DNA of 64,000 nucleotides from Tubulanus polymorphus (GCF_964204645.1 NC_134033.1:4922231-4986230); one strand, 5' to 3'. Positions 774 through 63,302 are shown, counted from the first letter of the stretch. Notes: generated by a model from the letters alone, not told the origin. Program-made: numbers and translations.

Positions 774-3700
774 ATGCAGCGAATGAAAGCGTTGTTCGTA
801 GTTTTACTGATCGCTTGCGGAGACTGTATATTTACGCGGGCTGATCGCGCAAACTCTATCGAGGAAGCTACGTCTGTTACAGTCAGTTCATCTTGTAACA
901 ACACTCAATACTCCGTCGATTCTAGGTCTGGTTACATCGTTACACCGAACTATCCGTCGTTAGTGCGCGGTGTTGAGTGTCGTTGGTTCGTCAACAGCTC
1001 TTTACCGGGAAGTTTTCTTGTTCAAGTTTACTACGACGTCGAGCCGTCGATATTCTGTAACGAAAACTACCTTCTCGTCGGTGAGTCCGACAACAAACTC
1101 TGCGCTACCGGAAGAAAACGAATAGATATCCGCAGTAACGATTTGATTTCGTTGTTGTTTTGGAGTAACGTCGATGGAGCGCGAGGTAGTCGGGTTTATA
1201 TCATATACCGTTTTGAAGAACAGAGTCGCTTGAAAATCGTACATAAATGCAACAAACGTTTATTCTTGTAATTTAAACTTTTTACTATTTGCTGACGATA
1301 CGACTGCCATTAACTCTCATTCCGATCTGAATATACTGCAATCAAATACTAATGTTGAGCTCACTAAACTGTTTAACTGGCTAAACTCCAATAGGCTATC
1401 TGCTAATCTGTTGAAAACGAATTATATGCTTTTCCATAAAAAGATCAATATTCTTGATGATATCGACCTTGTAATGGGTAATGTTTCAATAACTAGAAAC
1501 AGAGAAACAAAATTCCTTGGTGTAATAATTGACGACAGCCTAACATGGAACTCCCACATAAACAAGCTGTGCTCTATTGTTAGCAGAAATATTGGTGTAT
1601 TAAGAAAAGCACGACGTATTTTTCCTAGATCCGCGCTCATCAAGTTATTCAACGGTTTCATCCTTCCGTATCTACAGTACTGTAATATCGTCTGGGCATC
1701 TAATTATGTAACTAGGTTACGACCCCTTATTTTGCTTCAAAAACGCGCTATTCGCATTGCTAGTGGGGTAAATTTTCTAGAACACACTACTCCACTGTTC
1801 AAAAAGTCGTATCAACTCAAACTTCAAGACATCAATGTGTTCCAAAATTCTGTACTGATGTATAAATCTGTCCATGTGTTGCTGCCTGTCAAATTGTCCA
1901 ATAGTTTAATTCGTATTTCTGATCTTCATTCCCACAACACCCGTAACTCTAATCAATTTCGTTTACCTTATTACAGAACCAATATCAGGATGTTTTCTCC
2001 TAACATTAATTGTATTAGAGTCTGGAATTCTCTTCCAACTGAACTTCAGCAAGCATCCAACATCGATATATTCAAGCGGAATTTGAAAAGACATATAATA
2101 GGATTGTATTAATACTTATCATACTTGTGTTTAACATCATGTCCATCCATTCCGCCAGGGCATTAGGCTTTTTTCATTAAAAGTATACCCCCCTTTGGGG
2201 TCCCTTTTTGTCCTTTTTCTTTACTACGCTTTACAGTGTAGAAGTACTTTCTGTAACTTTTCTTTTATGTAATAGTGATGACTGTATTTCTGTATTGTAT
2301 CTCTTTAGTGAAGAAATAAACTTATTATATATATTATATAAACATGTAGTTAAAGAATTACCAACTCAAACAGGTTATGAATTCGTGATTTCTATCCGGC
2401 GATGTAAATTGTTGTTAGTATGGATCGGGATGCCAGACGGGTTTGCATTTAATCTAACGTTTATACAGATAGATTTCCGATTAAGACCAGGTGAGGATCC
2501 AATGAAAACTCGTCCTAAAATTTACGACGGATGGAACAGCACCAGTGAACTTATAGCTCTTATACGAGAACAAACCGGACATCCACCTTCATCGTTTTAT
2601 ACTAAAACTAATAAAGCACGTATTGAATTTGAAAATAGGAATTTGTTTCAGTCGCGGTTACTCGTGCAAGTTTACAAAATATCAGATTGGAACATCTCTA
2701 ACCCGTTAATTCAAGTCGATAATAAATCAGGACTGCTCACTACAATTGATGGAGTACCACATATAGTAACTCAGTCTAAATACTTATACTGCTGGTCTAT
2801 CACAGTCGATGTTCTGCAGTACGTCGTCTTCAACTGGACAAGTGATCTCGTCTCGTCACCAGGTGTCGTTGGTGTATATAAACAGGAAGGGTTACGTATT
2901 GTGAGAACTGATATTTTACTCAGTTTTAACCATCTTAGATCTCTGAGTGTAAAATCAGACGGATTTCTCGTCATTCTGTGCGTTTTAACGACATCGGATT
3001 TTTTTAGATCGAATTTGAAAATAGAATTTGATGTGAAATCGATGACAATTTCAGACTGCTATGTCAACAAGCCGAGGATATCGGTAAGTTTATTACAATG
3101 ATCTGTAAATCTGTATGAAATATTGTTTTGATAATCTATGATTTTGATGAAGATAATGCAGAGTGAAACAATCGAGAAATGCAATGTTTCAATCTTCAGA
3201 CAAAATAACAGCGCAATTTTAAAATCAAAATAATAATAATGATGGACAGAAGAAGGACAGTTTAAATGTACTAACTTATTATCAACATCGTTATGTATTT
3301 CAGGCAGTGAAAAATGTGAAATCATTGAACTCTCACAATACGTTTCCGAGATCAAAGAATACATTGTATCGTGTAACTACATTACAACTAAACTGGAAAG
3401 TGAACATCTATGAAGAACAGTTGAAACTAACAGCGATATCAGAAAGCTGTGATCGAGCTGGTTTTTATATGTTTGATGGTAGTAATTTCACAGCTAGACG
3501 CAATGGTCCGTATTGTCCTGGTTCATATTACGGTCGATCTGTCGTCAGCCTGATTACATCAGGTGGACCGGTTACTGTAGTAGCATACGCTTATTACTAT
3601 AATCAGTTAACAGTTGGTAGCTCATCTCTTAATTTTGCTTCTACTGATTGTGATGATTATGTTCTACAGGAAGAAAAACGTCAGATCAATATGACGTCAC

Positions 3701-6700
3701 ACTGTCTGGTGATTACACCTGAAAATCGACGCCTTCGCTTGAACAATATTCACATATTATCAGAACACGAATATCAAATTGACCGATGTTTTCTCAAGAT
3801 GCCATTGTCATGTGATCAGTATCTGAGTTTGATTAATCAGTTTCTTAATAACAGTCTCGTATTAAACACTGTAGATTTCACAGTTAATGAGTTTGGATTC
3901 TGGCAGGAACCACTAATAGTTAAACTACGTCGTAAATGTTTAGGAGTAAAAAAACTGAAAATATGCTGGGTTCCCTTGTCCCAACTGCGACTAAAGATCA
4001 ATGTAGACTCGTGCAGTCACCAAACTACCCGGGTTGGGCAGGGCGTACGATAAAATCTATTTCCTATAGATTCAAAAACCCGATCCAACAAAATGTATTT
4101 CAATATTACAGATTTATTGTCAAATTGATTGGATCAGTTTCATGCGCAACAGCCAAATCCTACGAGAACGATCCAATTATTTTGATACAATTAATGGAAT
4201 ATAACCCCTTCTTTGATGGAAGATTATTTAACCTATTCACGCTCAACATGAGACAAAAATATGTGAAAATAACGCGGTTCGTAGACTTATATTTTATAGT
4301 TTAATAGAAAATGCTTTGCGTTTTGAAGTGAAGAATACAATCCCAACCTTTCAAATACAATATACTTTACACGAGTCGTTACCGATTAATGATTTCGATG
4401 ATTTCTACTGCAAACACGGATTTCTGGATTCCGGAATTTCTTGCATCAAATTCATCAGAGATGAACGTCTGAATTGGGGTAACGCTGAAATATACTGTAG
4501 ACAGAAGTACGCGGGACATCTACTCAGTATCAACTCAGAACAAGAAATGATTTCCATCAAAAGATTATTCGCTAGAGAAAATCTCCAAATGGCGTACGCA
4601 TTAAAAACGCCCATAATGATGATTGGATTAAAATGGAAGGTAAAACTATTATGTACAAATGTGAATTGGAAAGGAAAGATTTTTAGAGAAGAAATAATAG
4701 ATTACCTTTTTTACGAAACAGAATGATGGTTATTACACGTGGACTGACGGTAAACCTTTGAGCTACACAGAGTGGTATAAACCTGTTATTAATGAAACGA
4801 TACCAGAAGTTATTCGAGGATTGATATCTCCGCTAAGAAAACAACCGATAAATGACGTCAATATGCCGTGTACGGCGATGATACTAAATAATCCACGAGG
4901 ATCAGCGAACTGGGTTCGATTCCCGTGTCAAATCGAGGAGACGCACACGACATTCATTTGTGAATTCGAGAGAATCGACATCAAACACAAACGCAATTCA
5001 GCGATAAACGATGCGAACAATTCAGTGAATCCCGAGGTTTACTGTAATAATGACAATCACTGTACGACTCGTTTCACACATCTGTGTAAGGAATCGGATG
5101 AACAAAGATGTACGTTCAATTCTCCTCGCTGTTATTCCCGGCACGAAAGGTGTATTTTAGAAAGGATGCCGATTGGTTTCCCGGTATGTAGAAATCTTGA
5201 ACACATACTCGCGTGTAATGACTTCGAATGTGCTGCTGGTACTGTAAAATGCCCGGCATCTTATTGTATACCAATCAGAAACGTTTGTGACGGTCGATCC
5301 GATTGTCCTAATTCAGAAGATGAACGAAACTGCGAGACTTGGTCCTGTCCGGGAATGTTTAAATGTGGCCAGGAAAATCGATGTATTCCGCAATCTGAAG
5401 TTTGCGACGGTGTCGTAAATTGTGAACATAACTCGGATGACGAGTCATACTGTAAGGTCGCGTGTCCTGAACGTTGTAATTGCCGGGGTCTTTTCATCGA
5501 TTGTGAAAATGCTCTTTTATCAGATATTACTGGTCGTTTTATAAAATCAACTCGAGTTTTGATTTTGTCGAATAACCGAGTCGTATTTAAGGAATCGACG
5601 TTTAACTCTTTCATTTATCTTCGTTTTCTCGATATTTCGGGCAATAATTTGTCTTACATCGTTCCCAATGCGTTTTCTAATCTAAACAATCTTTACACAT
5701 TAGACCTTACTCACAACCGCGTAGCATCATTATCTGCTAATACATTCGCTGGTTTGATCGGTTTAAAAGAACTATTTCTTGTCGGAAATCCGCTGCAACA
5801 TTTTAAAGACGGTAGTTTCTTAGGTCTGACATCACTTCCTGCCCTCGATCTTCACGGACTTTCTATATCGGTTCTCGGCGAAAATGTATTTAAAGGTTTA
5901 TCCGCATTACAGTCGTTAAATATCAGCAGTAACAAAATTCATCACATTTCAAGCTTTGCTTTTTCTGGATTGGTTGGACTTGAAATTCTTGACCTCGTCA
6001 ACAATTTTGGAGTAATATCCGTAGAAAGAAACGTTCTAGGCGATCTTATATCAATGAAATACTTATCATCGTATGCTTACAAATTCTGCTGCATGGCGCC
6101 GAATGTTGACCGATGTCTTCCCGAAGCTGATTTTCAACCTGCTCTGACCTGATAGGTAACACTGTACTGAGAGCCATCATCTGGATGATCGCATCTTTCA
6201 GTTTTCTCGCTAACAGTATCGTTATCTTATTTCGTATTCAAGCTTTGCGGATGAAATCCTCCGGAACACGTAACACATCTTCAGATATCCTTATCATTAA
6301 TATTGCCGGTTGTGATTTTCTGATGTCGGTCTAATTGGTTTTGATCGCAGGAGCTGACCACGCGTTCAAGGGTATCTATTATCTGAATTCTGAAACCTGG
6401 ACGAATAGCTCATTATGCCGTGTCACCGGGGTTATTGTCACCGTTTCGTGCGAAGGTTCCTTGACTTTTCTCTTAATTCTAACGCGTCAGAGATATTCAA
6501 ATATCGTCAACCCGTTTTCTGAAAGTCCAATTATAACTTGAAAATACGTTATCGGTATTTGCTGCATTTGTTGGCTCGTTATTAGCACAGTTTCTATTCT
6601 ACCGCTGTCATCGTCGTCTTACTTCGGAGACAATTTTTACGGTACAACCGGAGTTTGTTTGCCTATGAATTTTCTAACGATTGACGTCAATGGCTGGGAC

Positions 6701-7069
6701 TATTCATTCGCTATTTTTGCCTTGCTTAATGCGGCAATATTGGCTACGATAATGACGACGTACGCTCAGATGTATAGACTCGTATCTGGAAGTAGGTCGG
6801 CCTCGGGTAGAGCCGATCCTACCGAACTGGTTTTAGCTCGAAGGAGTTTAGTAATCAATCTTTGTAATTTATTTTGCTGGCTACCGATAATAATCGTTCA
6901 GTTTTGCGCCGTATTTTCGGTCGAGATACCGAACCAGGTGGCAGCTTGGCTGGCCGTTCTATTTTTACCGATCAACTCGTCTTTGAATCCGCTTCTTTAT
7001 ACAATACTAAATATCGATATGAAATCTATTCGTGAACGAAGACTAGGATTGACGACACCGAGTAAATAA
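774..7069 (+). pseudogene. GRL101-like LGR receptor copy A (disabled)
   Basis: Exons 774-3083 (split by a LINE), 3304-4639 and 4722-7069 with GT-AG phase-0 introns matching copy D. Lesions: LINE insertion at about 1260, two -1 frameshifts in exon 2 (about 3950 and 4235), an in-frame 909-bp deletion at about 5024, a 4-nt deletion at about 6131, TAA at 6332-6334 and TGA at 6539-6541. Confidence 0.92.
1260..2339 (+). mobile_element. 5'-truncated non-LTR retrotransposon (CR1/L2-group-like) inserted in exon 1 of copy A
   Basis: Open frame 1261-2112 contains the RT motif LFADDTT, KFLGVIIDDSLTW and the C-terminal HNTR...WNSLP...FKRNLK signature. AATAAA at about 2315 is followed by a TA-rich tail. 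Receptor exon sequence resumes at about 2341. Possible degenerate TSD aaac(g/a)t at 1254-1259 / 2340-2345. Confidence 0.9.
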
Positions 7070-9001: not shown

Positions 9002-9039
9002 AGAAGTCACATTATGGGTTATTCATACAGGGACTCGTT

Positions 9040-15154: not shown

Positions 15155-15637
15155 ACTTCTTTTAATTCTAACTCGTCAGAGATATTCAAATATCGTCCAC
15201 CCGTTTTCTAGAAGTCCGATTATAACTCCGAAATATGTTATCGGTATTTGCTGTATTTGTTGGCTCGTTATAAGCACAGTCTCTATTTTACCGCTGTCAT
15301 CGTTGTCTTACTTCGGAGACAATTTTTACGGTACAACTGGAGTTTGTTTGCCAATGAATTCACTGACGATCGACGTCAATGGCTGGCACTATTCATTCGC
15401 TATTTTTGCCTTGTTCAATACGACCATATTGGCTACGATAATGACGTCGTACGCTCAGATGTATAGACTCGTATCTGGAAGTTCGTCGGGCTCGGTTAGA
15501 GCCGAACCTACCGATTTGATTTTAGCTCGAAGGAGTTTATTAATCAATCTTTGTTATTTATTTTGCTGGTTACCGATAATAATCGTTCAGTTTTGCGCTG
15601 TATTTTCGGTCGAGATACCGAACCAGGTGGCCGCTTG
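15155..15637 (+). pseudogene. Orphan fragment of the GRL101-like 7TM region (end of TM3 to start of TM7)
   Basis: Near-identical to copy D at about 62692-63176, with small indels; ends abruptly after NQVAA. Confidence 0.92.
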
Positions 15638-18272: not shown

Positions 18273-21200
18273 CTAACAAACTGTCAAACATTTTTAATCC
18301 AGTTCAATTGTAAATAAATGCAACTTTTATTGTTAAAAAGTTCCACTTGAAATTACAACTGCATTTTATACCAACAGCTGAAATTATGTTTTTATTCAAA
18401 GATCTATCAACTAAGTATTCTAACCTGACCTATATATTCGGCCTACCCATTCAGGCTAAGGTTTGGGGGTAGGGAGGGGGATACTGAAGTAGAGAGACAT
18501 GTTATACAGGTCACACCGGAATTCTTCAGTCACTCTGTCGTTCATTCAACTTTAGGTTCAATCTTCTGTGACAAGGGGGTCTTGTTCTCTGTTGTGTGCT
18601 GGGGGTGAAGACACGTACTCTGTGGCCTAGTCTTCTGGGGTCTTGTCTCACCGATAACCCTGAAATTTTCATGTTTATTTTAAGTAAAATATTTACATAA
18701 TAGGCGTTGTCTTAAAAAACAATAAATTTGAAAAAACACGGAAATTTTGAAAGAAAGTGAAAAAACCTAAAAATAGAGGGAAATGGAAAAAAAGAAGCAT
18801 GAAATACAGGATCCTGAAATAAAGGTATTAGGCATAAGTAATAAACAAACTGCTATTTCTATATGTAGACCCAGAGACCCACAGGACCGTGACGCAAATA
18901 GCACCCTATATACTTACGCATTTGATTTAAGATTGTATTAATATTCATGCACTCCTATGACTTACTAACTCACCGAGTAAGTTCCTAATCACTAACTAAA
19001 CCTATAAAACATAATTTCAGCTGTTAACTTTTTTCTTACTTACAGTTTATCCAATCCTGTGCGTGTTATGTATGAATCCAATGATAATCCTTGAGTCAAT
19101 TTGATTCCTTGTGTTTTTGACAACAGTTCAGTTTTTGAGCCAAGTTCATATCAATTCTGAATTAGTTTAAGCGCGATTCCATTTCAAATTAATCCTAAAC
19201 AAGACGACAATGCAAATTCCATAGATTTCTGAGCAACAGCTCAGTTTTTGAGGACAGTTTTTTTCAAATCTTTATTTTGTTTCAGCGCGATTCCATTCAG
19301 AATACACCCTTATATGTTCACAAGAGGTGTCTGCTTTTTAACGGGAGACAGTTTGAGCATCTCTGTCCAGACTGGTAAACCATACACCATCGCGATAACC
19401 TCTGGGTGTGAACATATACAAGACACCCAGTTGTAATAATCTGCGCGAACGACGAATTGTCGAACACGATGAAGTTTCATATTTCATATTATCTAACTAT
19501 TTGGGTCACTGGTCATAATCCATCTTCGCTCTATAAACTGCGCGGCTCGACAAAAATCAATGCATTCTTAACTACATGAAGTACGTATCCATATAGTATA
19601 AACCAGATCCTAGAAATATCTAATAGCAGTTGATTTAAAATATGAAAAATTAATAATCTAATTCGATGATGCCGCTAACACCAGTTCGTGCTCAGAAAGC
19701 ATTCTCATCTGTGATCGGACGCATAATTAGTCATACTCTAACAAGTCCATACCCGCCACAATACGAAGTGTTTAATAGAGACGCAGAATATTTTTTGATA
19801 GATAGATTATGTCATCGAATATTATAAAAATAACTCAACGCAGTTCGGGAGCGACAGTAAATACATTTTTAACGAAATAATTGCACATGATTATAAACAC
19901 GATATATTGAAACACGTCTAAATTTAGAAACCGCGGTAATTACAGCGAAACCGAGAACAGATGAAAGTAACAGAAATACGAGACTGGCACCAGTTTGAAG
20001 GGGGATTTTTTTACAAAATAATTGGACTCGATCAATTCGTCAACATCTGCCATTTGCAAATTCGACATAACTTACCAGCTACTCTTTTGAAAAATGTGGC
20101 GCAAATTTGGAAATAGTTAGAAATGTGTTTGTTTTGAAGCGTGAATTGTGTTCAATATGCAGCGAATGAAAGCGCTGTTCGTAGTTTTACTGATCGCTCG
20201 CGGAGACTGTATATTTACGCGGGCTGATCGCGCAAACTCAGTCGAGGAAGCCGCGTCTGTTACAGTCAGTTCATCTTGTAACGACACTCGATTCTCCGTC
20301 GATTCTACGTCTGGTTACATCGTTTCACCGAACTATCCGTCGTTAGTGCGCGGTGTTGAATGTCGTTGGTTCGTCAACAGCTCTTTACCGGGAAGTTTTC
20401 TCATTCGAGTTTACTACGACATCGAGCCGTCGATATTCTGTAACGAAAACTACCTTCTCGTCGATGAGTCCGACAACAAACTCTGCGCTACTGGAAGTAA
20501 ACAACTAGATATCCGCAGTAACGATTTGATGGAGCGCGAGGTAGTCGGGTTTATATCATATATCGTTTTGAAGAAAAGAGTCGCTTGAAAATCTTACATA
20601 CATGTTCGAAACGTGCAGTAAACGAAATACCAACTCAAACAGGTTATGAATTCATGATTTCTACCCGGCGATGTAAATTGTTGTTAGAATGGATCGGGAT
20701 GCCAGACGGGTTTGCAATGAATTTAACGTTCATACAGATGGATTTCAGATTAAGACCAGGTGAGGATCCGATGAAAACTCGTCCTCAAATTTACGACGGA
20801 TGGAATAGCACCAGTGAACCCATAGCTCTTATACGAGAACAAACCGGAAATCCACCTTCATCGTTTTATACTAAAACTAATAAAGCACGTATCAAATTCA
20901 TTTCAAATAGATACCCATTTTTTCAGTCGCATTTACTCGTGCAAGTTTACAAACTATCAGATTGGAACATCTCTAACCCGTTAGTTCAAGTCTATAATGA
21001 ATCAGGCCTGCTCACTACAATTGATGGAATACCACATATAGTAACTCAGTCTAAACACTTATACTGCTGGTCTATCACAGTCGATGTTCTGCAGTACGTC
21101 GTCTTCAACTGGACACGTGATCTCGTCTCGTCACCAGGTGTCGTTGGTGTTTATAAACAGGAAGGGTTACGTATTGTGAGAACTGATGTTTTACTCAGTT

Positions 21201-21689
21201 TTAACCATCTTAAATCTCTGAGTGTAAAATCAGACGGATTTCTCGTGATTCTGTGCGTTTTAACGACATCGGATTTTGTAAGATCGTATTTGAAAATAGA
21301 ATTTGAAGTGAAATCAATGACAATATCAGACGTCCACGTCAACAAGCCAAGGATATCGGTAAGTTGACTACAGTCATTTGTAAATTAGCTTTGTATGTTA
21401 TAATGATAATAATAATGATAGCGATAACGATAACGATAGCGATAGCGATAGCGGAAGCGACAACACTCCACAATAGATAATATGTTCATTCTGTATTCGT
21501 AAAGTGAGCTTCTAAAATTGCAGAAAAAAAGCTCTATTGTGCATTTATAGACTTTGTCAAATCTTTTGATTCGGTGTGGCGAGCAGGGTTGTGGCAAAAG
21601 CTTTTGAATAATGGTATTAACGGAAATGTATTTATTCTCATACGTAATGTGTATAGTAACGTTAATACTGTAATGTATGGAAGCTCGAA

Positions 21690-23218
21690 GTAAATATAAG
21701 AAAAACAAAGTATTAATTTTTGGCACAAGAGCTCAAAGGAATAATGTCCGATTTATTATGGGTAATCAAAACATCGAAATGTTAGTACATACAAGTATCT
21801 TGGTATCCCCTACAACAAAACAGAAGTTTACCAGCAACAAAGAAATGTCTAATTAGTCAAGCAAAAAGAGCTCTCCATGTTTTGTACACTAGATACTCTT
21901 AACCAACCACTGGACTGCCAGTTTAAACTTTCCGATCCGACTATCGTTCGTATTCTAACATATGGCTGTGAGGTCTGGAGGTTCTCCAACCTACAGTGCC
22001 TAGAAAATGTCCATATTTCCTTTCTGAGGCGCATATTACATCTCAGAAATAGTACTCCATCTTCTATGTTGTCTCGATCGTTGCGATCACGATGAAAGTG
22101 AGAATTTTAACTTTTTGGCACAAACAGTCTCATCCCCTTTCGGTAATTTGTCGCATATTTTATATAGGTCTGTTATGAAATTGTCCCGAGGAATAGGGAT
22201 GCTCCAAATATTGAATGGTTCCAAAGTATAAAAAATATCCTATACCCCGTCGGACTAAATAAAATATGGGATTCACAATCATTCCCAAATGTTAATTGGC
22301 TCAAAGCAACATCCAAACAACGGTTTCTAGATCAATATAAGCAATCATGGACTAGCTCCATGCGCGATTCTACTAAAGGTTCTCACTACACGTTATTCAA
22401 AACCGATCTACTCCTGGAAAACCGTCTCTGATCTTTCGGATAACCTCATAGTTAACTTAACTTCATTCCGTACTACAAATCATAAGCTCCCAATAGGAAC
22501 TGGCAGATGGAATAATGTAGAGCGTGCTGAAAGAATATGTGCATTGTATAATAATGGGATTGGGGACGAATTTCATTACATTTTCAACTGTGCATAATTA
22601 AATGATTATATCTAGAAATTATATCTAGACAGGAGATTTTATACGAACCCCAACCTTTTCAAATATGAATTATTAATGCAAACTAAAGATAGAGCCGAAC
22701 TTCGTAAACTGTGTATTTTTGTTGGTAGAATTGTCACAGAGCGGTTTCCTCCGGATCGTTGGGCGATGATATTTCGTGGTGATTTCCACTCCGCAACGAA
22801 GATTTCAGGACCAGTTTGACGGAGGAACTGCTACCATAACACAACCACGAACTGTCGTGGCGATTGACCAGCCGTTTCTTCTCACCAGGAACTGATGAAT
22901 TTAGTTAATAATTTGTTTTTCCTACACTGATCCTCGAAAACCCTTCAGGTCACCTAATTTAGGATCGGATTCACGACGCAGGAGATCATGATATTCTTTG
23001 GCTGGTTGGCGTCGGCAATCATTCCTCGTCGGGTCCCATACCGGGCGCCAAATGTCACAGAGCGGAGTGACGGAATTATGAAATTTTTCAATTAATAGCT
23101 CACATGAAAATCGATATTTAACCATGTATCTATCTACTGTACGTCATATATAATGTAAACTCGAATTGTCTTTGTATTAAGACCAAGAGTTTGTCAAACA
23201 AAGTAAAGTAAAGTAAAA
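21690..23218 (+). mobile_element. Decayed 5'-truncated non-LTR retrotransposon in intron 1 of copy B
   Basis: Fragments ILIFG, YKYLGI, RILTYGCEVW, RTTNHKLPIGTGRWNNVERAERICAL..GDEFHYIFNC (C-terminal zinc-knuckle region) and KLCIFVGRIMKFFN*. Tail of (aagta)n at about 23200. Sits within a (GATAGC)n-type microsatellite. Clade not assigned. Confidence 0.82.
22732..23072 (-). mobile_element. 341-bp LTR-retroelement-derived mini-insertion nested in the LINE
   Basis: 4-bp TSD GAAT (22728-22731 / 23073-23076). Removing the insert restores the LINE ORF end. 13-bp direct repeat tgtcacagagcgg at 22732 and 23053. The minus strand reads ...tgtgaca-tt-TGGCGCCCGGTATGGGAC, resembling a tRNA-Lys primer-binding site. 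Confidence 0.7.
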
Positions 23219-30281: not shown

Positions 30282-33772
<3,491 letters not shown>

Positions 33773-39600: not shown

Positions 39601-41439
39601 GCTTTAGTGTAGATGAAGGCTAGGCACTGCACATTGTGGATTGACTGGAACTCTTAACTCACAAAATTAAACGAGTCAACAAGAAAGATCCAATAATTGG
39701 ACATTTGTCTAACTATATTATTTAACAGCTTGAAATAACACATTCTGCAAGAGTATACAAAGGAAATCAGTTCTTACATTATATCAGAATCAATAGTTCG
39801 CTTAACTCTGGCTAGAATTCTGGTTCCATTGCTTCATATTATTGAAATAGCATTCGAATAGCCATCTTATTTTTAAAAATTGTGTCGTTCAGCTATCCTG
39901 CTGCAAATTTCGCAGTTGAAGTTTACTGGTGCCATCTGATTTCTCAGTATCTCAAAAAATTTGCACATTCTAAGCCTGAATCTAAAAATAGAAAAAGGTG
40001 CATTTTAGTCGGATATAAAAGAATAGTGGCTAATACACCCTGGACTATATAGCCTATGGGGTGGGCCTAGTTTGAAAGCACTGAGGTCCGAGAGAACAGC
40101 ACTTAGTAAATAAATACTGAAATTAAACTTACAAAACACCCAGTACTTGAGATGATGTACTTGACAAGAAGTGTCACCAGCTAAGCATATCAACTTTGTC
40201 TATGACTCCTCCTTTTATAGATTCAGTAGTAGTCTAAAAATAAGAATCGGTACATTTTTCTAACAGTCGGTATGTCATTTCTTCAAAAAAACTAATTATT
40301 ATCACGCCACAGCAAATAAATTATTCACAGTTGTTGAATGGTTAGCCCGATTTAGATTAATTGGTTGACGCTAATCAGTATGACCCATACGTAGGGGCCT
40401 ACTGCATGCCATTGGCGTCAATCCATTCCATTCCATTCCACAGTGAATTAAAAAGAAATTTAGTTAGATCCCTTATGTCCAAAAGCTGCATCATTTATAT
40501 AACTAACTGTCAAATTTAATTTACCTCCTTCAGAGAATACCATAGTCCGTGGCCCATCAACGTGTTGACAAAAGAAAAGTTGCTCCATGTTTTATACATG
40601 AACGTTCAAATAAGATATTTTGCGTCTTGCAGGGAATATTGAGCATAGTGTTTAAGTTGGCTTGCACGGTTTGTGAATGGGTTTTCCTCATTATGCTGCC
40701 TGTATGCATTAAAAATCCGGATTTCAAGCGAATTAATTTGTCCAACAAGTGGCCCTCTAGAAGTATACTCCACACATACTGTCCATGCGTGTCTCTGTAA
40801 CCGAAGGTAGAGACTAAAACACGGTTCAGGACTCGGGAGCGGACACCGGCCCGGAAAATATTTCAAAACGTGTATTGTTGGTACCTAGCACGATTTCAGC
40901 GTTTTTCGGTAATTCCCTGAAATTTCGGCGTTTTTCGGAAATTCCCTGAAATTTCAGCGTTTTTATTTCTGCGTTTCAGCATTTCAGTGATTCAGCTTTT
41001 TCAGCGAAGTTCAGGAACCGGTTAACGAGTTTGTATTCTGGCAGGAACCACTGATAGTTAAACTACGTTGTCAATGTCGGGGAGTGAAAAAAGCGCATAA
41101 GTTTTGGATTTGCCGGTTCCCGTCTCCCAGTTGCTACTAAAGATAAATGTGGACTCGTGCAGTCACCGAACTACCCGGGTTCGGCAGGAAGTACATCTAA
41201 ATCTTTTTTCTACGAATTTGAAAAACCCGATACAACATAATATATTTCAATATTTCAGATTTATCGTCAAATCTATTGGATCAGTTTCATGTGAAACAAA
41301 CAACGTGGATGCGAATGATCCGATCATTTTGATACACAGCTGATAAAGTAATACCTCTTCCAAAATGGAAAACTGTTCAAATTTATAAGGACCCAACACA
41401 AAACTTTAATATGTGAAAATAACGCGGTTCGTGAACTTA
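36642..41439 (+). pseudogene. GRL101-like LGR receptor copy C (3'-truncated, disabled)
   Basis: Exon 1 is 36642-37875, with a disruption and stop at about 37128 and TAA at 37474. Exon 2 starts at about 38170-38230, has a frameshift at about 38372 and a 2.2-kb transposon insertion. Homology stops at about 41439 after ENNAVR; the CTL, LDLa, LRR and 7TM regions are absent. Confidence 0.9.
38795..41020. mobile_element. Non-autonomous Mutator-like (MULE) DNA transposon, 2226 bp
   Basis: About 230-bp TIRs (38795-39025 / 40790-41020) begin cggttcctgaacttcgctgaaaaagctgaa and contain internal sub-repeats. 9-bp TSD gttaatgag / gttaacgag; the uninterrupted site cagttaatgagtttgg is present in copy A. 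No intact transposase ORF. Confidence 0.88.
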
Positions 41440-57060: not shown

Positions 57061-60000
57061 ATGCAGCGAATGAAAGCGTTGTTCGTAGTTTTACTGACCG
57101 CTTGCGGAGACTGTATATTTACGCGGGCTGATCGCGCAAACTCTGTGGAGGAAGCCGCGTCTGTTACAGTCAGATCATCTTGTAACAACACTCAATACTC
57201 CGTCGATTCTACGTCTGGTTACATCGTTTCACCGAACTATCCGTCGTTAGTGCGCGGTGTTGAATGTCATTGGTTCGTCAACAGCTCTTTACCGGGAAGT
57301 TTTCTCGTTCAAGTTTACTACGACATCGAGCCGTCGATATTCTGTAACGAAAACTACCTTCTCGTCGGTGAGTCCGACAACAGACTTTGCGCTTCTGGAA
57401 GAAAACAACTAGATATCCGTAGTAACGATTTGATTTCGTTGTTGTTTAGGAGTAACGTCGATGGAGCGCGAGGTAGTCGGGTTTCTATCATATATCGTTT
57501 TGAAGAACAGAGTCGCTTGAAATTGATACAACATAAATGCAACAAATATTCAGTAAAAGAATTACCAACTCAAACAGGTTATGAATTCGTGATTTCTACC
57601 CGGCGATGTCAATTGTTGTTAGAATGGATCGGGATGATAGACGGGTTTGCATTGAATTTGACGTTTATACAGATAGATTTCAGATTGAGACCAGGCGAGG
57701 ATCCGATGAAAACTCGTCCTCAAATTTACGACGGATGGAACAGCACCAGTGAACCTATAGCTCTTATACGAGAACAAACCGGGCATCCACCTTCATCGTT
57801 TTATACTAAAACTAATAAAGCACGTATTGAAATCATTTCGAGTATACATTGGTTTAAGTCGAAGTTACTCGTGCAAGTTTACAAAATATCAGATTGGAAC
57901 ATCTCTAACCCGTTAATTCAAGTCTATGGTAAATCAGGACTGCTCACTACAATTGATGGAATACCACATATAGTAACTCAGTCTAAACACTTATACTGCA
58001 GGTCTATCACAGTCGAGGTTCTGCAGTACGTCGTCTTCAACTGGCCACGTGATCTCATCTCGTCACCAGGTGTCGTTGGTGTATATAAACAGGAAGGGTT
58101 ACGTATTGTGAGAACTGATATTTTACTCAGTTTTAACCATCTTAAATCTCTGAGTGTAAAATCAGATGGATTTCTCGTGATTCTGTGCGTTTTAACGACA
58201 TTGGATTTTTTAAGATCGACTTTGAAAATAGAATTTGAAGTGGACTCAATGACAATATCAGACGTCTACGTCAACAAGCCAAGGATATCGGTAAGTTTTA
58301 CATAATGTTTGTAAATTCGTTTTGTATAATAGAAATAATATAAAAATCTTTGACTTTGCTTATTACCTTGACCCGTTTAACCAGCGAAATCTCGGATACC
58401 CACATTATGTTTTCCATCATTTTGACATAATCCATCAGATAACCTGCAGCTGAATGCCAATAAACAATGAACTCTTCACTGTCACTTTGTCGTCAACTAT
58501 CTACTAGATAACTAACTCTAACCAACTTTTTAGCATTCACCTCAAGAAAAGCGTCTTTACACATACAAATTATAATAATTAGTTGGAGAGTTCATACAGA
58601 CCTTTCAAAGTATGATGCATATTTTTATCAATTTTAGGTGAATCTGATATTTGCTGAATTGTTCCCGAGATCAAGGAATACATTTTATTTTGTAACTACA
58701 TTACAACTAAACTGGAAAGTGAACATCTATGAAGATCAGTTGAAACTAACGGTGCTATCAGAAAACTGTGATCGAGCTGGTTTTTATATATTTGATGGTA
58801 GTAATTTCACAGCTAGACGCTATGGTCCGTATTGTCCTGGTTCATACTACGGTCGATCTGTCGTCAGCCTGATTACATCAGGTGGACCGGTTACTGTAGT
58901 AGCATACGCTTATTACTATAGCAGTCAGTTAACAGTTGGTGGCTCATATCTTAGATTCGCTCCTACTGATTGTGATGGTTATGTTCTACAGAAAGAAGAA
59001 CGTCAGATCAATATGACGTCACACTGTCTCGTGATTACACCTGAAAACCGACGCCTTCGCTTGAAAAATATTCACATATTATCAGAACACGAATATCAAA
59101 TTGACCGATGTTTCCTCAAGATATCATCGCCATGTGGTCAGTTTCTGATTTTGAATAAGTTTCGTTATAACAGTCTAGTATTAAATACTGTTATTGAGTT
59201 CGGATTCTGGAAGGAACCAATAATAATCAAACTACGTCGTAGATGCCTGAGTGTGAAAAAAGCATATGGATTTGTACTTGCCGGTGACCGTTTTCCAGTT
59301 ATTACTAAAGATAAATGTGGACTCGTGCAGTCACCGAACTACCCGGGTACGAAATTTTCATACACATCTATTTTCTACACATTTCGAAACCCGAGCAGTC
59401 AAAATGTATTTCAATACTATAGATTTATCATCAAATACATTGAATCAGTTTCATGTGAAACAAACAAAAGGGGTAAGCACGACCCACTAACACAAATACA
59501 AGTGATAACTTACAACCATTTCCTTAATGAAAAAAATTTCAAAATTATTTTAGCTCAACATGAAACAAAAATTTGCGAAAATAATGCAGTTCGCGGTCTT
59601 ATATTTTACAGTTTAAGTGATAACAACCTGTACGTTGAAACAAAAAATTATGTCCCCATATTTCAAATACAATACTCTTTACACGAGTCGTTACCGATTA
59701 AAGATTTCGATAATTTCTACTGTAAACAAGGATTTCTGGATTCCGGTATATCCTGCATCAAATTCATCAGAGATGAACGTCTGAATTGGGAGAACGCTGA
59801 AATTTACTGTAGACAGAAGTACGCGGGACATCTACTCAGTATCAACTCAGAAAAGGAAATGATTTCCATCAAAAGAATATTCGCTACAGAACTTCTCCGA
59901 ATGGCGTACACACTAAAAGCGCTCATAATGATGATAGGATTAAAATGGAAGGTAAGACTATCATGTACAAATGTTAATTGGAAAGGAAAGATTTTTAGAT

Positions 60001-63000
60001 AAGAAATAATAGATTTCCTTTTATTTACAAAACAGAATGATGGTTATTACACGTGGACAGACGGTAAACCTTTGAGCTACACAGAGTGGTATAAACCTGT
60101 TATTAATGAAACGATACCAGAAGTTATTCGAGGATTGATATCTCCGCTAAGAAAACAACCGATACATGACGTCAATATGCCGTGTACGGCGTTGATACTG
60201 AATAATCCACGAGGATCAGCGAACTGGGTTCGATTCCCGTGTCAAATCGAGGAGACGCACACGACATTCATTTGTGAATCTGAGAGAATCGACATCAAAA
60301 ACAAACACAATTCAACGATAAACGATGCGAAAAATTCAACAAATACAAACTTAAATAAAACCATAGATCAAATGATTCCCGATGTTACTCTAATTACTCA
60401 AACCTGTCCAAGAGGTTGGGTAACTTTTTCCGGACAATGTTTTCAAATACTAACCGACTGGAAAAACAATCGAGGTTTGAATCTTCGGGGTGCTAGAGAA
60501 ATGTGTCACAGCATCCGCGCCGAAATAGGAAGAATTACTTCAAATACAGAAAGCGATATGAAAAATCTTGTCAGCAAATTTCAATATCGACATCAATATG
60601 GCGCTACACTGACAATGGAACTCGACGGATTTAAAGTTATCAAACCAATGGTGATCAGAAATGAAATTACTTATATTCAATCAGTTATATGGTTATCGAA
60701 ACCCTTCGATGATACGAAAGATAAAGTGCATTCCGTGTTGTGTACCTATAATGTAACTGGTGATGAGTTAGCTTCTATAAGCGGTTGTAAATCGTGGCAG
60801 TTTGAATGTAACGATCAAAGATGTATCAGCGACCATCGCGTATGTGATACCAGACACGACTGTCAACGCGGTGAAGATGAACGCAATTGTACGGATATCA
60901 ATTTACAGAGTCAGTTCCGCTGTAACGACGGACAGGTTATATCGATTAGCGGTTTTTGTGACTTAATAAGAGATTGCATCGATGGCTCGGATGAGAACTC
61001 GTGCTATCATCCACCGTGTTTATCTACGCAATATCGCTGTTCCAATCACCAATGCATCGATAGTTATAAACGATGTGACGGACTAGCCAACTGTAAAGAC
61101 GGTTCCGATGAGACTGAATGCACTGCCGAACTTTGTCAGGGGTTCACGTGCGCGGACGGTGAATGTATTAGTTCTCAGTTGTATCGGGATGGTGTCGTGG
61201 ATTGTAGCGGAAGTCTCGAAGAAGACGAATTGGTCACTAATATGACAGTGAATCCCGAGGTTTACTGTAATAATGACAATCACTGTACGACTCGTTTCAC
61301 AGATCTGTGTAAGGAATCGGATGAACAAAGATGTTCGTTCAATTCTCCTCGCTGTTATTCCCGACAAGAAAGGTGTATTTTAGAAAGGACGCCGAATGGT
61401 TTCCCGGTATGTAGAAATCTTGAACATATACTCGCGTGTAATGACTTCGAATGTGCTGCTGGTACTGTAAAATGTCCGGCATCTTACTGTATACCAATTA
61501 GACACGTTTGTGACGGTCGATCCGATTGTCCTAATTCTGAGGATGAACGAAACTGCGAGACTTGGTCGTGTCCGGGAATGTTTAAATGTGGCCAGGAAAA
61601 TCGATGTATTCCACAATCTGAAGTTTGCGACGGTGTCGTAAATTGTAAACATAACTCAGATGACGAATTATACTGTAAGGTCACGTGTCCTGAACGTTGT
61701 AATTGCCGGGGTCATTTCATCGATTGTGAAAATGCTCTTTTATCAGATATTACTGGTATTTTTACAGAATCAAGTCGGGTTTTGATTTTGTCGAAGAACC
61801 GAGTCGAATTTAACGAGTCGACGTTTAACTCTTTTATTTATCTTCGTTTTCTCGATATTTCGGATAATAATTTGTCTTACATCGTTCCCAACGCATTTTC
61901 TAATCTAAACAATCTTTATACATTAGACCTTACTCACAACCGCATAACATCATTATCTGCTAATACATTCGCAGGTTTGATCGGTTTAAAAGAACTATTT
62001 CTTTTCGGAATTCCGCTGCAACATTTAGAAAACGGAAGTTTCCGAGGTTTGACGTCACTCACTGTTTTGGATCTTAAAGGACTTTCTATATCGGTTCTTC
62101 GTGAAAATGTATTTAAAGGTTTAGCCGCATTACAGTCGTTAAATATCAGCAGCAACAGAATCCATTATATTTCGAGCTTTGCTTTTTCTGGATTAGTTGG
62201 ACTTGAAATTTTAGACCTCGTCAATAATTCCGAGGTAATATCCGTTGATCGAAACGTTCTTGTTGATCTTACATCATTGAAATACCTCGCTTCCGATACT
62301 TACAAATTTTGCTGCATGGCACCGAATGTTGACCGATGTCTTCCCGGAGCTGATCAATTTTCGACCTGTTCTGACCTGATGGGTAACACTGCACTGAGAG
62401 CCATCATCTGGATGATTGCATCTTTCAGTTTTCTCGGTAACAGTATCGTTCTTTTATTTCGAGTTCAAGGTTTGCGGATAGCATCCTCCGGAACACGTAA
62501 CAAATCTTCAGATATCCTCATTGTAAATGTTGCCGGTTGTGATTTTCTGATGTCGGTCTATTTGTTTTTGATCGCAGGAGCTGACCATACGTTCAAAGGC
62601 GTTTATTATCTGAATTCTGAAACCTGGACGGATAGCTCATTGTGTCGTCTCGCCGGGGTTATTGTCACCGTTTCGTGCGAAGGTTCCTTGTCTTTTCTCT
62701 TAATTCTAACACGTCAGAGATATTCAAATATCGTCAACCCGTTTTCTAGAAGTCCGATTATAACTCCGAAATACGTTATCGGGATTTGCTGCATTTGTTG
62801 GCTCGTTATAAGCACAGTTTCTATTCTACCGCTGTCATCGACGTCTTACTTCGGAGACAATTTTTACGGTACAACCGGAGTTTGTTTGCCTATGAATTTA
62901 CTGACGATCGACGTCAATGGCTGGCTCTATTCATTCGCTATTTTTGCCTTGTTTAATACGGCTATATTGGCTATGATAATGACGACGTACGCTCAGATGT

Positions 63001-63302
63001 ATAGACTCGTATCTGTAAGTAGGTCGGGCTCGGGTAGAGCCGATCCTACCGAACTGGTTTTAGCTCGAAGGAGTTTAGTAATCAATCTTTGTAATTTATT
63101 TTGCTGGTTACCGATAATAATCGTTCAGTTTTGCGCCGTATTTTCGGTCGAGATACCGAACCAGGTGGCCGCTTGGCTGGCCGTTCTATTTTTACCGATC
63201 AACTCGTCTCTTAATCCGCTTCTTTATACAATACTTACTATCGATATGAAATCTATTCGTGAACGCAATAAACGACGACTTGGATTGACAGCTAGCAAAT
63301 AA
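57061..63302 (+). CDS. Intact giant GRL101-like leucine-rich-repeat GPCR (SP-CUB-like xN-CTLD x2-LDLa x6-LRR-7TM), 1936 aa; exons 57061-58290, 58638-59951, 60036-63302
   Basis: All three exons are open and join in phase 0 (tcg|gtaagt...ttttag|gtg; aag|gtaaga...aacag|aat). Splicing rebuilds the CTLD motif MIGLKWK/NDGYYTWTDG. Other motifs: CUB SGYIVSPNYP..C.W; LDLa FxC..G.CI....CD...DC.DGSDE; LRRs; hinge YKFCC...DQFSTCSDL; TM7 LPINSSLNPLLY. Confidence 0.92.

What the first reader, a model, noticed from the sequence alone, without database searches (positions are those of the whole stretch)
774..63302. Tandem birth-and-death array of a giant CUB-lectin-LDLa-LRR GPCR: candidate variable recognition-receptor system
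Seen: four same-strand copies plus two fragments of a 1936-aa receptor within 64 kb; only copy D is intact, and each dead copy has its own independent lesions. Established: LDLa-LRR-7TM is the GRL101/RXFP-type LGR layout, and GRL101-like genes are expanded in several invertebrate lineages; CUB and C-type lectin domains are ligand-recognition modules. Inference: adding about 1100 aa of CUB and CTLD modules to an LGR and turning copies over rapidly suggests a lineage-specific family of pattern-recognition, allorecognition or chemosensory receptors that couple variable extracellular binding directly to G-protein signalling.
Basis: partly seen in the sequence, partly recalled or inferred. Interest (0 to 1): 0.8.

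Follow-up and report, generated by a model that had tools for sequence, protein, structure and literature searches.

The report
Decayed edge of giant GRL101-like receptor array
The window holds one intact and three broken copies of a 1936-residue GRL101-type G-protein-coupled receptor gene, lying at the sparse, decaying edge of a family of about 370 copies in the ribbon worm Tubulanus polymorphus. This is a larger case of a receptor expansion already published for snails.

Summary
Copies A (774-7069), B (20157-28240), C (36642-41438) and D (57061-63302) lie on the + strand, with two 7TM fragments (15157-15637, 35930-36092). Only D is intact: three exons, GT/AG introns, 1936 aa.

The genome is Tubulanus polymorphus, a nemertean. 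The window is a sparse edge of a family of about 370 copies in roughly 10-kb tandem arrays on at least nine contigs. Of 20 sampled array copies, 11 are fully open.

The receptor half (six LDLa, LRR, 7TM) is a type-C LGR. CUB-CTLD-LDLa-LRR-7TM is already annotated as "GRL101-like" in mites, sea urchin and abalone, so the architecture is not new.

I could support only one weak CUB and two lectin-like domains that lack sugar-binding motifs. About 620 residues remain unassigned, and exon 2 has no outside relatives. Both AlphaFold runs failed.

Selection is purifying throughout (dN/dS 0.24-0.57), and no window shows significant positive selection. Very uneven dS points to gene conversion.

Tandem GRL101 expansions are published for apple snails (chemosensory organs) and Biomphalaria (a schistosome-resistance locus). 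The function here, sensory or immune, is unproven.

The scan already found this family in at least eight other windows of this genome.

The parts
57061..63302 (+). Copy D: the only intact gene, 3 exons, 1936 aa (exon 1 57061-58290; exon 2 58638-59951; exon 3 60036-63302)
   Evidence: ORFs, GT/AG splice sites and phase checked. There is no stop in the joined CDS. D versus other copies gives dN/dS 0.35-0.65.
57181..57501 (+). D: N-terminal CUB domain (weak), after a signal-peptide-like start (MQRMKALFVVLLTACG)
   Evidence: Pfam CUB scores E=0.01 in D, below the curated cut-off. All 12 exon-1 paralogs match, best E=2.4e-5. hhalign against CUBs of GRL101-like proteins gives E=3e-4, probability 42%.
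57502..59714 (+). D: about 620 coding residues (aa 148-769, interrupted by intron 1) with no assignable family; contains the most variable patches and a conserved CGLVQSPNYPG motif at 59316
   Evidence: No Pfam hit in 19 exon-2 members. The exon-2 profile against 1.84 billion proteins finds only CTLD-half matches. No internal repeats by hhalign. AlphaFold gave pLDDT 34 and 31.
59715..60278 (+). D: C-type lectin-like domain 1, split by the 84-bp intron 2
   Evidence: hhalign probability 97%, E=3.6e-11, against CTLDs of Tetranychus, Lytechinus and Panonychus GRL101-like proteins. Snaclec hits in PDB. No EPN/QPD/WND motifs.
60405..60752 (+). D: C-type lectin-like domain 2
   Evidence: phmmer against PDB: NKG2D E=4.3e-6, plus mannose receptor, CD23 and snaclecs. 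No EPN/QPD/WND motifs.
60786..61676 (+). D: six LDL-receptor class A modules (the fourth degenerate), with a cysteine-rich spacer between the fourth and fifth
   Evidence: Pfam Ldl_recept_a E=9e-35, five stretches. Module starts located by sequence.
61686..62300 (+). D: leucine-rich repeat domain with N-cap and hinge
   Evidence: Pfam LRR_8 E=1e-46, six stretches. RXFP1 structure 7TMW aligns over LRR and 7TM, E=7e-78.
62391..63227 (+). D: rhodopsin-type 7TM domain with QRY (for DRY), CWLP and NPLLY motifs
   Evidence: Pfam 7tm_1 E=2e-23. Motifs found. Lowest dN/dS of the gene, 0.24.
774..7069 (+). Copy A: pseudogene
   Evidence: insertion at exon-1 codon 162; exon-2 frameshifts and two stops; 909-bp in-frame deletion in exon 3 (CTLD2 and about three LDLa modules lost); 4-nt deletion at exon-3 codon 773.
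1256..2347 (+). 1.09-kb dispersed repeat inserted in exon 1 of copy A
   Evidence: At least 15 copies at 99-100% identity on other contigs, plus many 5'-truncated copies that share the 3' end. This is a young, retroposon-like element.
15157..15637 (+). Fragment F1: isolated piece of the 7TM region (exon-3 ORF residues 878-1034)
   Evidence: 93.8% DNA identity and 90% protein identity to D.
20157..28240 (+). Copy B: pseudogene with a 2.2-kb intron 1
   Evidence: 28-nt deletion at exon-1 codon 124 and TAA at exon-3 codon 1014; exon 2 is open. The long intron 1 is shared with copies at C9:5.02 Mb and C22:0.05 Mb.
35930..36092 (+). Fragment F2: 7TM piece about 550 bp upstream of copy C's start codon
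   Evidence: Similar 7TM fragments lie upstream of exon 1 in L009, L013, L014, L019 and L020, so this is probably a relic of the duplication junction.
36642..41438 (+). Copy C: truncated pseudogene (exon 1, then exon 2 to residue ~331, no exon 3)
   Evidence: 7-nt insertion and two stops in exon 1; 1-nt deletion in exon 2. The distal exon-2 part at 41021-41438 matches array-type exon 2 at 64-75%.
38795..41020 (+). 2.2-kb element with 234-bp terminal inverted repeats, inserted in exon 2 of copy C
   Evidence: At least 40 dispersed copies at 94-99% identity. The same insertion lies at the same distance (128 bp) from the exon-2 motif at C9:4.443 Mb and C9:5.039 Mb.

Best explanation
Shown. The window is a thinned-out, decaying stretch of a very large tandemly duplicated gene family in Tubulanus polymorphus.

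Each unit is a three-exon gene for a receptor of about 1936 aa. The domain order is:
- signal peptide;
- one weak CUB;
- about 620 aa of unassigned extracellular modules;
- two C-type lectin-like domains;
- six LDLa modules;
- a leucine-rich-repeat domain;
- a rhodopsin-type 7TM.

This makes it a type-C LGR with the GRL101-like layout.

The family evolves by birth and death. Units multiply by unequal crossing-over. About half of the sampled array copies keep a full open frame under purifying selection. Others die by transposon insertion, frameshift, deletion or stop. Dead copies can themselves be duplicated. Gene conversion keeps most of the gene alike, while a few outer-domain blocks stay old and different.

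Copy D is an intact outlier. Its exon 2 is at most 81% identical to any other copy.

Inferred. The intact genes encode working cell-surface receptors. The variable N-terminal modules bind different ligands. That signal is passed through the LDLa/LRR/hinge part to a near-constant 7TM, which activates a G protein as in RXFP1.

The repertoire most likely serves sensing of outside chemical cues, as proposed for the expanded GRL101 genes of apple snails. Immune or self/non-self recognition is the second possibility.
For: Genome identity: contig C9 is 16,481,795 bp, the same as the contig of NCBI LOC141911221 of T. polymorphus.

Family size:
- 372 first-look candidates for exon 1 and 380 for exon 2; every scored one is significant.
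- 242 hits to the back-translated CGLVQSPNYPG motif against 0 in the control.
- Roughly 10-kb spacing in the core arrays.

Intactness: 11 of 20 sampled copies have a full three-exon open frame with conserved splice sites. None of 2000 simulated neutral copies at 6% divergence stays open.

Selection: dN/dS is 0.57, 0.53, 0.41, 0.33, 0.27 and 0.24 running from exon 1 to the 7TM. dS ranges from 0.01 to 0.68 along the gene.

Receptor type:
- RXFP1 (7TMW) is the best solved structure, E=7e-78.
- GRL101-like proteins score 320-443 bits on the LDLa-LRR-7TM part.
- The type-C clade has 100/100 support against LGR5.
- QRY, CWLP and NPLLY motifs are present.

Dead-copy duplication: shown by the shared TIR insertion.

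Precedent for a sensory role: 29-132 tandem GRL101 genes in apple snails, highly expressed in tentacles and labial palps (PMC6573481). GRL101-like expression is restricted to the tentacles in Charonia (PMC13403566).
Against: - There are no expression data, so neither the tissue nor transcription itself is shown.
- RefSeq holds only short partial models of these genes: 689 aa and 525 aa.
- No ligand is known for any GRL101-type receptor; the type is called an orphan in PMC11863921.
- The fold of about 620 ectodomain residues is unknown, because both AlphaFold runs failed.
- There is no significant positive selection. The best window, aa 646-653, gives omega 3.6 with p=0.003, against a Bonferroni threshold of 3e-4.
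- The 7TM tree leaves the family in an unresolved polytomy with GRL101-like and RXFP clades, on a long stem of 1.78.
- Frameshifts caused by assembly errors cannot be excluded without reads.
Confidence: 0.6

Rival explanations
1. The family is a germline-encoded immune or self/non-self recognition repertoire. The variable ectodomain loops would bind pathogen or conspecific molecules and trigger G-protein signalling in immune or epithelial cells.
For: - Variation is concentrated in short patches of exons 1 and 2. Of the 72 alignment columns with 4 or more nonsynonymous changes, 59 lie in aa 155-770.
- There is nominal nonsynonymous excess at aa 646-653 and 412-418.
- Gene turnover is high.
- CTLDs are common in immune receptors; the best PDB match of CTLD2 is NKG2D.
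- A cluster of 12 CTL-LDL-LRR GRL101-like genes lies in a schistosome-resistance locus of Biomphalaria sudanica (PMC12297450).
Against: - No window survives multiple-test correction.
- The most divergent block, aa 670-770, has dN/dS about 0.3 with dS of 0.3-0.7. That fits old variants, not fast adaptive change.
- The CTLDs lack carbohydrate-binding motifs.
- In Biomphalaria the validated variant lies in a neighbouring Zn-RING-IAP gene, not in a GRL101 gene (PMC12297450).
- There are no expression or polymorphism data here.
Confidence: 0.2
2. The arrays are selfishly or neutrally amplified DNA, a macrosatellite-like segmental amplification. The gene is then a passenger, and most copies are not used.
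For: - The arrays are highly regular, with a period of about 10 kb.
- 45% of sampled copies are dead, as are 3 of 4 in this window.
- Dead copies get duplicated.
- RefSeq built only fragmentary models.
Against: - Open frames of more than 1930 codons with conserved splice sites are kept in 11 of 20 copies at 5-10% divergence, whereas 0 of 2000 neutral simulations stay open.
- dN/dS is 0.24-0.57 with a domain gradient, lowest in the 7TM.
- 34 codons are under significant negative selection.
Confidence: 0.07
3. The receptors are classical hormone receptors for relaxin- or insulin-like peptides, as type C1 LGRs are, multiplied to match a multiplied peptide family.
For: - RXFP1 is the closest solved structure.
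- The LDLa + LRR + 7TM layout is that of relaxin receptors.
- Type C2 receptors have been suggested to bind insulin-like peptides (cited in PMC6267866).
Against: - About 370 copies, half of them pseudogenes, is unlike any endocrine receptor.
- The RXFP clade excludes the family with 100/100 support.
- The extra ~1090-aa CUB/unknown/CTLD ectodomain is absent from RXFPs.
- GRL101-like proteins score higher than RXFPs: 200-234 bits against 153-167 bits on the 7TM region.
Confidence: 0.05
4. The copies are an assembly artefact, either haplotigs or collapsed and expanded repeats.
For: Nothing positive. Tandem arrays of this kind are hard to assemble, and read depth is not available here.
Against: - Window copies differ by 6-14% in DNA and carry different lesions and different transposon insertions.
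- Each window copy is about as close to array members 1-2.7 Mb away as to its neighbours.
- Subfamilies at 47-76% protein identity sit on other contigs.
Confidence: 0.02

Closest known systems
GRL101-type (type C2) leucine-rich-repeat GPCRs, first described in Lymnaea stagnalis; CUB/CTLD-bearing 'GRL101-like' proteins of Tetranychus, Panonychus, Lytechinus and Haliotis
   Same: Same domain order: CUB, C-type lectin-like (not found by Pfam in the Haliotis protein), about five LDLa, LRR, rhodopsin 7TM. The CTLD is homologous (hhalign probability 97%). The LDLa-LRR-7TM part scores 320-443 bits. These receptors are orphans.
   Different: This receptor is 450-800 aa longer. About 620 aa between the CUB and CTLD1 match nothing, and there is a second CTLD. 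The 7TM sits on a long private branch. Copy number is about 370 instead of a handful.
Tandem GRL101 expansion in apple snails (Ampullariidae), 29-132 genes (PMC6573481)
   Same: A lophotrochozoan lineage-specific burst of GRL101-type genes by tandem duplication, read there as environmental sensing.
   Different: A different phylum and an independent burst. The number is about three times larger, and the ectodomain is longer. Expression in sensory organs is shown for the snails but not here.
SudRes2 cluster of 12 CTL-LDL-LRR GRL101-like genes in Biomphalaria sudanica (PMC12297450)
   Same: A dense cluster of paralogous lectin-bearing GRL101-like GPCRs, with truncated and missing copies between haplotypes. 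An immune-recognition model was proposed for it.
   Different: That cluster has 12 genes in 440 kb, against arrays of dozens at a 10-kb period here. No association with any phenotype is available for the worm.
Relaxin family peptide receptor RXFP1 (PDB 7TMW), type C1 LGR
   Same: It is the best solved-structure match over LRR and 7TM (E=7e-78). The LDLa + LRR + 7TM logic gives the likely way the signal reaches the G protein.
   Different: RXFP1 has one LDLa, no CUB or CTLD, a known peptide ligand and a single gene. The RXFP clade excludes this family.

Membership tests
Type C LGR (LDLa + LRR + rhodopsin 7TM) | Rhodopsin-family 7TM domain with its core motifs | tested here: met
   Pfam 7tm_1 E=2e-23. 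QRY, CWLP and NPLLY motifs are present.
Type C LGR (LDLa + LRR + rhodopsin 7TM) | Extracellular leucine-rich-repeat domain directly before the 7TM | tested here: met
   Pfam LRR_8 E=1e-46. Aligns with the RXFP1 LRR and 7TM in one stretch.
Type C LGR (LDLa + LRR + rhodopsin 7TM) | LDL-receptor class A module(s) N-terminal to the LRR | tested here: met
   Pfam Ldl_recept_a E=9e-35, five stretches. Six modules by sequence.
Type C LGR (LDLa + LRR + rhodopsin 7TM) | 7TM groups with type C rather than type B (LGR4-6) | tested here: met
   The clade of RXFP, GRL101-like and this family has 100/100 support against LGR5-like sequences. No type A sequences were in the tree; glycoprotein-hormone receptors score far lower in PDB (E about 1e-35 to 1e-25).
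GRL101-type (type C2) subgroup | 7TM groups with GRL101-like proteins and not with relaxin receptors (C1) | tested here: inconclusive
   The RXFP clade (100/100) excludes the family, but the family joins an unresolved polytomy on a long stem. Bit scores favour GRL101-like proteins: 200-234 against 153-167. The Lymnaea GRL101 sequence itself was not in hand.
GRL101-type (type C2) subgroup | Several LDLa modules, often preceded by CUB and/or C-type lectin-like domains | tested here: met
   Six LDLa. CTLD1 is homologous to the CTLD of GRL101-like proteins. CTLD2 matches. The CUB is weak but matches in 12 of 12 paralogs, best E=2.4e-5.
Carbohydrate-binding C-type lectins | EPN or QPD motif together with WND (calcium and sugar site) | tested here: not met
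   None of these motifs occurs in the CTLD region of any of 12 intact copies. The domains are lectin-like, not shown to be lectins.
   Only the first module matches. No exon-2 member of 19 matches CUB at E<=1. hhalign of modules 2-6 against CUB gives E of 0.01-0.47, and there is no similarity between the modules.
Chemosensory receptor repertoire | Expression in sensory cells; one or few receptors per cell | not testable with these tools
   No expression data were available.

The most novel reading that the evidence does not exclude
The ~620-residue stretch between the CUB and the first lectin-like domain may be built of fold(s) private to this nemertean lineage. Its short hypervariable patches (for example aa 412-418, 512-516, 596-628, 646-658 and 687-704) would then form the binding surface of a germline-encoded, diversified recognition system of about 200 working receptors. 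That system would report directly to G proteins. It would be an invertebrate sensor repertoire for immune, self/non-self or prey and mate cues, different in build from all known chemoreceptor and immune receptor families.
Probability: 0.15. Interest if true: 0.8.

Novelty: new variant of a known kind. Interest (0 to 1): 0.45.

Why it matters
If the intact copies are expressed, this would be one of the largest known families of giant multi-domain GPCRs. At about 370 units of roughly 10 kb, it takes up more than 1% of a 268-Mb genome, in a phylum whose sensory and immune receptors are almost unknown.

It would be a second, independent lophotrochozoan burst of GRL101-type receptors. That strengthens the view that this orphan receptor type is a general scaffold for lineage-specific sensing.

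Public annotation holds only 525-689-aa fragments of these genes, so protein-based surveys would badly undercount the family.

This window adds the picture of how the array decays. Young transposons hit exons, deletions remove domains, and dead copies are copied again.

Tried and rejected
Steps that failed or gave nothing:
- AlphaFold2 on exon 1 (12 paralogs) and on exon 2 (19 sequences from three subfamilies about 50% alike) gave pLDDT 34 and 31. No fold search was run, because matches to such models are meaningless.
- The ESM Atlas was busy on all four tries.
- Profiles of exons 1 and 2 against PDB sequences found only the CTLD half and noise.
- A word search with a 1460-aa read-through ORF, scored on its exon-2 part, found nothing among proteins of 804-2557 aa.
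- The HMMER profile search of exon 2 against 1.84 billion proteins found nine hits, all to the CTLD half. Exon 1 was not searched this way because only one job is allowed.
- hhalign found no similarity between the six putative N-terminal modules.
- The look-up of encoding contigs had no record for P0001.
Subfamilies on C5, C10, C11 and C12 and the C6 20.7-Mb array could therefore not be fetched, and intactness rests on 20 copies chosen for good exon-3 matches, which biases the sample towards intact genes.

Ideas rejected:
- A shared transposon footprint in copies A and C at exon-1 codon 164. The site lies in a variable patch and the sequences do not support it.
- Recent local duplication of A-D. 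None of them is closest to a window neighbour.

Handling of the joined model: the joined 1936-aa protein was never sent to a search, family scan or folding tool. Those were run exon by exon, by reference. Joined coding sequences were built only inside local scripts, for frame checks, codon alignments, dN/dS and local profile comparisons.

Full report
**What is in the window**

The window is G000:C9:4922231-4986230, in a 268-Mb assembly of 77 contigs with about 37% GC. Contig C9 is 16,481,795 bp long. That is exactly the length of the contig carrying NCBI gene LOC141911221 of Tubulanus polymorphus. That RefSeq protein maps at 92-99% identity onto one array copy of this genome. The organism is therefore the palaeonemertean T. 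polymorphus. Nothing here is human.

Self-comparison finds four same-strand copies of one long gene and two fragments:
- copy A, 774-7069;
- fragment F1, 15157-15637;
- copy B, 20157-28240;
- fragment F2, 35930-36092;
- copy C, 36642-41438;
- copy D, 57061-63302.

**The gene model**

In D the three long ORFs join through canonical GT..AG introns, both in phase 0. Exon 1 is 57061-58290, exon 2 is 58638-59951 and exon 3 is 60036-63302. Intron 2 is 84 bp. The second intron cuts a C-type lectin-like domain in two. The joined sequence aligns over the junction with the lectin domains of known GRL101-like proteins (hhalign probability 97%), which confirms that splice.

**The lesions**

All details are unless stated.
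- Copy A has a 1.09-kb insertion at exon-1 codon 162. It also has frameshifts and two stops in exon 2, a 909-bp in-frame deletion in exon 3 that removes CTLD2 and about three LDLa modules, and a 4-nt deletion at exon-3 codon 773.
- Copy B has a 28-nt deletion at exon-1 codon 124 and a TAA at exon-3 codon 1014. Its exon 2 is open.
- Copy C has a 7-nt insertion and two stops in exon 1 and a 1-nt deletion in exon 2. A 2.2-kb insertion splits its exon 2. It ends after exon-2 residue ~331 and has no exon 3.

The statement "only D is intact, each dead copy has its own lesions" is therefore correct within the window.

Two additions follow from looking outside the window.
- A's insertion is a dispersed repeat. 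At least 15 copies are 99-100% identical, and many 5'-truncated copies share its 3' end. It is a young, retroposon-like element.
- C's insertion has 234-bp terminal inverted repeats and at least 40 copies at 94-99% identity. The same element sits at the same distance (128 bp) in front of the same exon-2 motif at C9:4.443 Mb and C9:5.039 Mb. This copy was therefore already dead when it was duplicated.

B's long intron 1 is shared with copies at C9:5.02 Mb and on C22. No window copy is the closest relative of another: each is 94-97% identical to array members 1-2.7 Mb away.

**The scale**

- Exon 3 of D finds 43 scored matches at 85-91% protein identity, nearly all without stops.
- Exon 1 gives 372 first-look candidates and exon 2 gives 380. 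All 102 and 96 scored ones are significant.
- A conserved 7TM 33-mer occurs 71 times with up to 3 mismatches.
- An LDLa 30-mer occurs 130 times.
- The back-translated CGLVQSPNYPG motif occurs 242 times, against 0 for reversed controls.

Core arrays have a period of 9-12 kb: C9 2.80-3.14 Mb on the + strand, C9 3.81-4.15 Mb on the - strand, and C6 18.66-18.90 and 20.73-20.92 Mb. Further subfamilies at 47-76% identity lie on C4, C5, C6, C8, C10, C11 and C12. Around the window the copies are 35-100 kb apart, so the window is a thinned edge.

Of 20 array copies I could fetch, 11 have a complete open three-exon frame with conserved splice sites. One of those carries an in-frame 378-bp deletion. Nine carry a stop, a frameshift or a missing exon. 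The sample was picked by good exon-3 matches, so it leans towards intact genes.

**What the protein is**

Pfam finds five LDLa stretches, LRR_8 and 7tm_1 in exon 3 with strong scores. By sequence there are six LDLa modules. The best solved structure is the relaxin receptor RXFP1 (7TMW), E=7e-78 over LRR plus 7TM. It scores far ahead of LGR4 and the glycoprotein-hormone receptors on the 7TM part.

In a tree of the hinge-7TM region, RXFP, GRL101-like proteins and this family form a clade with 100/100 support against LGR5-like sequences. The RXFP clade (100/100) excludes the worm family. Beyond that the family sits on a long private stem in an unresolved polytomy. GRL101-like proteins score higher than RXFPs.

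Current classification calls GRL101-type receptors "type C2" and describes them as orphans (PMC11863921). I file the family as a type-C LGR of GRL101-like architecture. Its placement inside C2 is supported by domains and scores, but not resolved by the tree.

**The N-terminal 1090 residues**

- Residues 41-147 match Pfam CUB weakly. D scores E=0.01, below the cut-off. All 12 paralogs match, best E=2.4e-5.
- CTLD1 (aa 770-929) is secure.
- CTLD2 (aa ~972-1087) hits NKG2D at E=4.3e-6 and a run of other C-type lectin-like domains.
- Neither CTLD has EPN/QPD or WND in any of 12 intact copies. By the established motif rule they are lectin-like domains with no sign of calcium-dependent sugar binding.
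- Residues ~148-769 remain open:
  - no Pfam match in 19 exon-2 sequences from three subfamilies;
  - no PDB match;
  - no similarity between the six putative modules, or to CUB beyond an "SPNYP" motif.
- The exon-2 profile search of 1.84 billion proteins returned nine hits, all to the CTLD half.
- Both AlphaFold runs failed, with pLDDT 34 and 31.

So "CUB-lectin" is right as a label for the ends of the ectodomain. "About 1100 aa of CUB and CTLD modules" is not shown.

**Is the architecture new?**

No. Proteins that NCBI names GRL101 or GRL101-like in Tetranychus urticae, Panonychus citri and Lytechinus variegatus have CUB, Lectin_C, five LDLa stretches, LRR and 7tm_1 in the same order. The Haliotis cracherodii protein has CUB but no Pfam Lectin_C match. 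The layout is therefore old in bilaterians. What is particular here is the extra ~620 residues, the second CTLD and the copy number.

**How the copies evolve**

Among 12 intact copies the mean protein identity is 91%.

| Region | dN/dS |
|---|---|
| Exon 1 | 0.57 |
| Exon 2 | 0.53 |
| CTLD part | 0.41 |
| LDLa | 0.33 |
| LRR | 0.27 |
| 7TM | 0.24 |

A neutral simulation at 6% divergence never keeps the frame open (0 of 2000). The intact copies are therefore maintained by selection.

dS is very uneven, from 0.01 to 0.68. The highest values lie at aa 670-770 and 1550-1610, where dN/dS is about 0.3. This is the pattern expected if gene conversion keeps most of the gene alike while some blocks are old variants.

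A parsimony count on segment trees gives an overall omega of 0.47 and 34 codons under negative selection. Only one codon is nominally positive. Columns with four or more amino-acid changes cluster in aa 155-770 (59 of 72). No 8- to 20-codon window survives correction. The best are aa 646-653 (omega 3.6, p=0.003) and 412-418 (p=0.04), against a threshold of 3e-4. Diversifying selection on a few loops is possible but not shown with 12 sequences.

D itself is an outlier. Its exon 2 is at most 81% identical to any other copy, while exons 1 and 3 are 91% identical. It is under purifying selection, with omega 0.35-0.65.

**What is known**

- Apple snails have 29-132 GRL101 genes made by tandem duplication. 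Many are highly expressed in tentacles and labial palps and are read as environmental sensors (PMC6573481).
- Charonia expresses a GRL101-like receptor only in the tentacles (PMC13403566).
- Crown-of-thorns starfish express one in sensory tentacles (PMC6267866).
- Biomphalaria sudanica has a cluster of 12 CTL-LDL-LRR GRL101-like genes in a schistosome-resistance region. Copies are truncated or missing between haplotypes, and an explicit model has the lectin domain presenting pathogen ligands to the GPCR (PMC12297450).

I found no paper on this family in nemerteans. RefSeq has only 525-aa and 689-aa partial models of it, one named "GRL101-like".

**Verdict**

The thing is a real, very large, lineage-specific expansion of a known receptor type, seen here at its decaying margin.

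The mechanism I commit to has three steps:
1. The variable N-terminal modules bind ligands.
2. The signal passes through the LDLa/LRR/hinge part to the 7TM, as in RXFP1.
3. The 7TM activates a G protein.

The repertoire most likely senses outside chemical cues. I put that at roughly 0.45 within the functional readings. Immune or self/non-self recognition is second at about 0.2. Only the gene structure, the domains at both ends, the copy number, the turnover and the purifying selection are shown. Binding, signalling and tissue are inferred.

Earlier follow-ups of this scan reached the same family in at least eight other windows of this genome. My copy counts, mosaic dS and snail precedents agree with them and were redone here independently.

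**Method note**

The joined spliced protein was not submitted to any search, scan or folding tool. Those ran exon by exon, by reference. Joined coding sequences existed only inside local scripts.

Noticed in passing
window 12888-13694 (+), 44829-45544 (-), 31387-31854 (-): Remnants of other, small rhodopsin-type GPCR genes unrelated to the array. Two are paralogs about 51% identical and match Pfam 7tm_1 (E=3e-8 and 2e-10). The third is a shorter 7tm_1 piece (E=1.6e-5). None looks complete in one frame, so they are either pseudogenes or genes with introns.
   Followed up: partly
window 9944-10342 (+): A 133-aa open frame with a PAN/Apple domain (Pfam PAN_1, E=9e-7), lying between copy A and the small GPCR remnant. 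It is not known whether it belongs to a gene.
   Followed up: no
window 30267-31163 (+) and 32801-33769 (+): Two long open frames between copies B and C. The first has a weak ankyrin repeat (E=0.006) and ends in a hydrophobic stretch. The second, 323 aa, looks like several membrane helices with a pore-like '[12 protein letters not shown]' segment. By eye this resembles an ankyrin-TRP-type channel gene, but Pfam and PDB searches gave nothing.
   Followed up: partly
window 1256-2347: A very young dispersed repeat of 1.09 kb. At least 15 copies are 99-100% identical on seven or more contigs, and many 5'-truncated copies share its 3' end. It looks like a recently active retroposon-like element.
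   Followed up: partly
window 38795-41020: A 2.2-kb non-coding element with 234-bp terminal inverted repeats and at least 40 copies at 94-99% identity. It is probably a non-autonomous DNA transposon. Most other copies carry about 120 extra bases in the middle.
   Followed up: partly
window 35930-36092; L009 7309-7533, L013 6936-7067, L014 187-324, L019 310-543, L020 19-243: A short piece of the 7TM region (exon-3 ORF residues ~853-930) lies upstream of exon 1 in many units. This suggests that the original duplication breakpoint fell inside exon 3.
   Followed up: partly
G000:C9:2808485-2810878 (locus L008/L021): The RefSeq model LOC141911221 (689 aa, 'uncharacterized protein') covers only the LDLa-LRR-7TM part of one array copy. 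It skips about 380 bp of continuous exon 3, as if that stretch were an intron. A second model (P0097, 525 aa, 'GRL101-like') is also partial. Public annotation of the family is fragmentary.
   Followed up: partly
G000:C10:2520243-2526880: Three hits to the exon-2 motif are spaced only 3.3 kb apart. That is much tighter than the ~10-kb gene unit, so it may be an array of exon-2-only fragments or a shorter relative.
   Followed up: no
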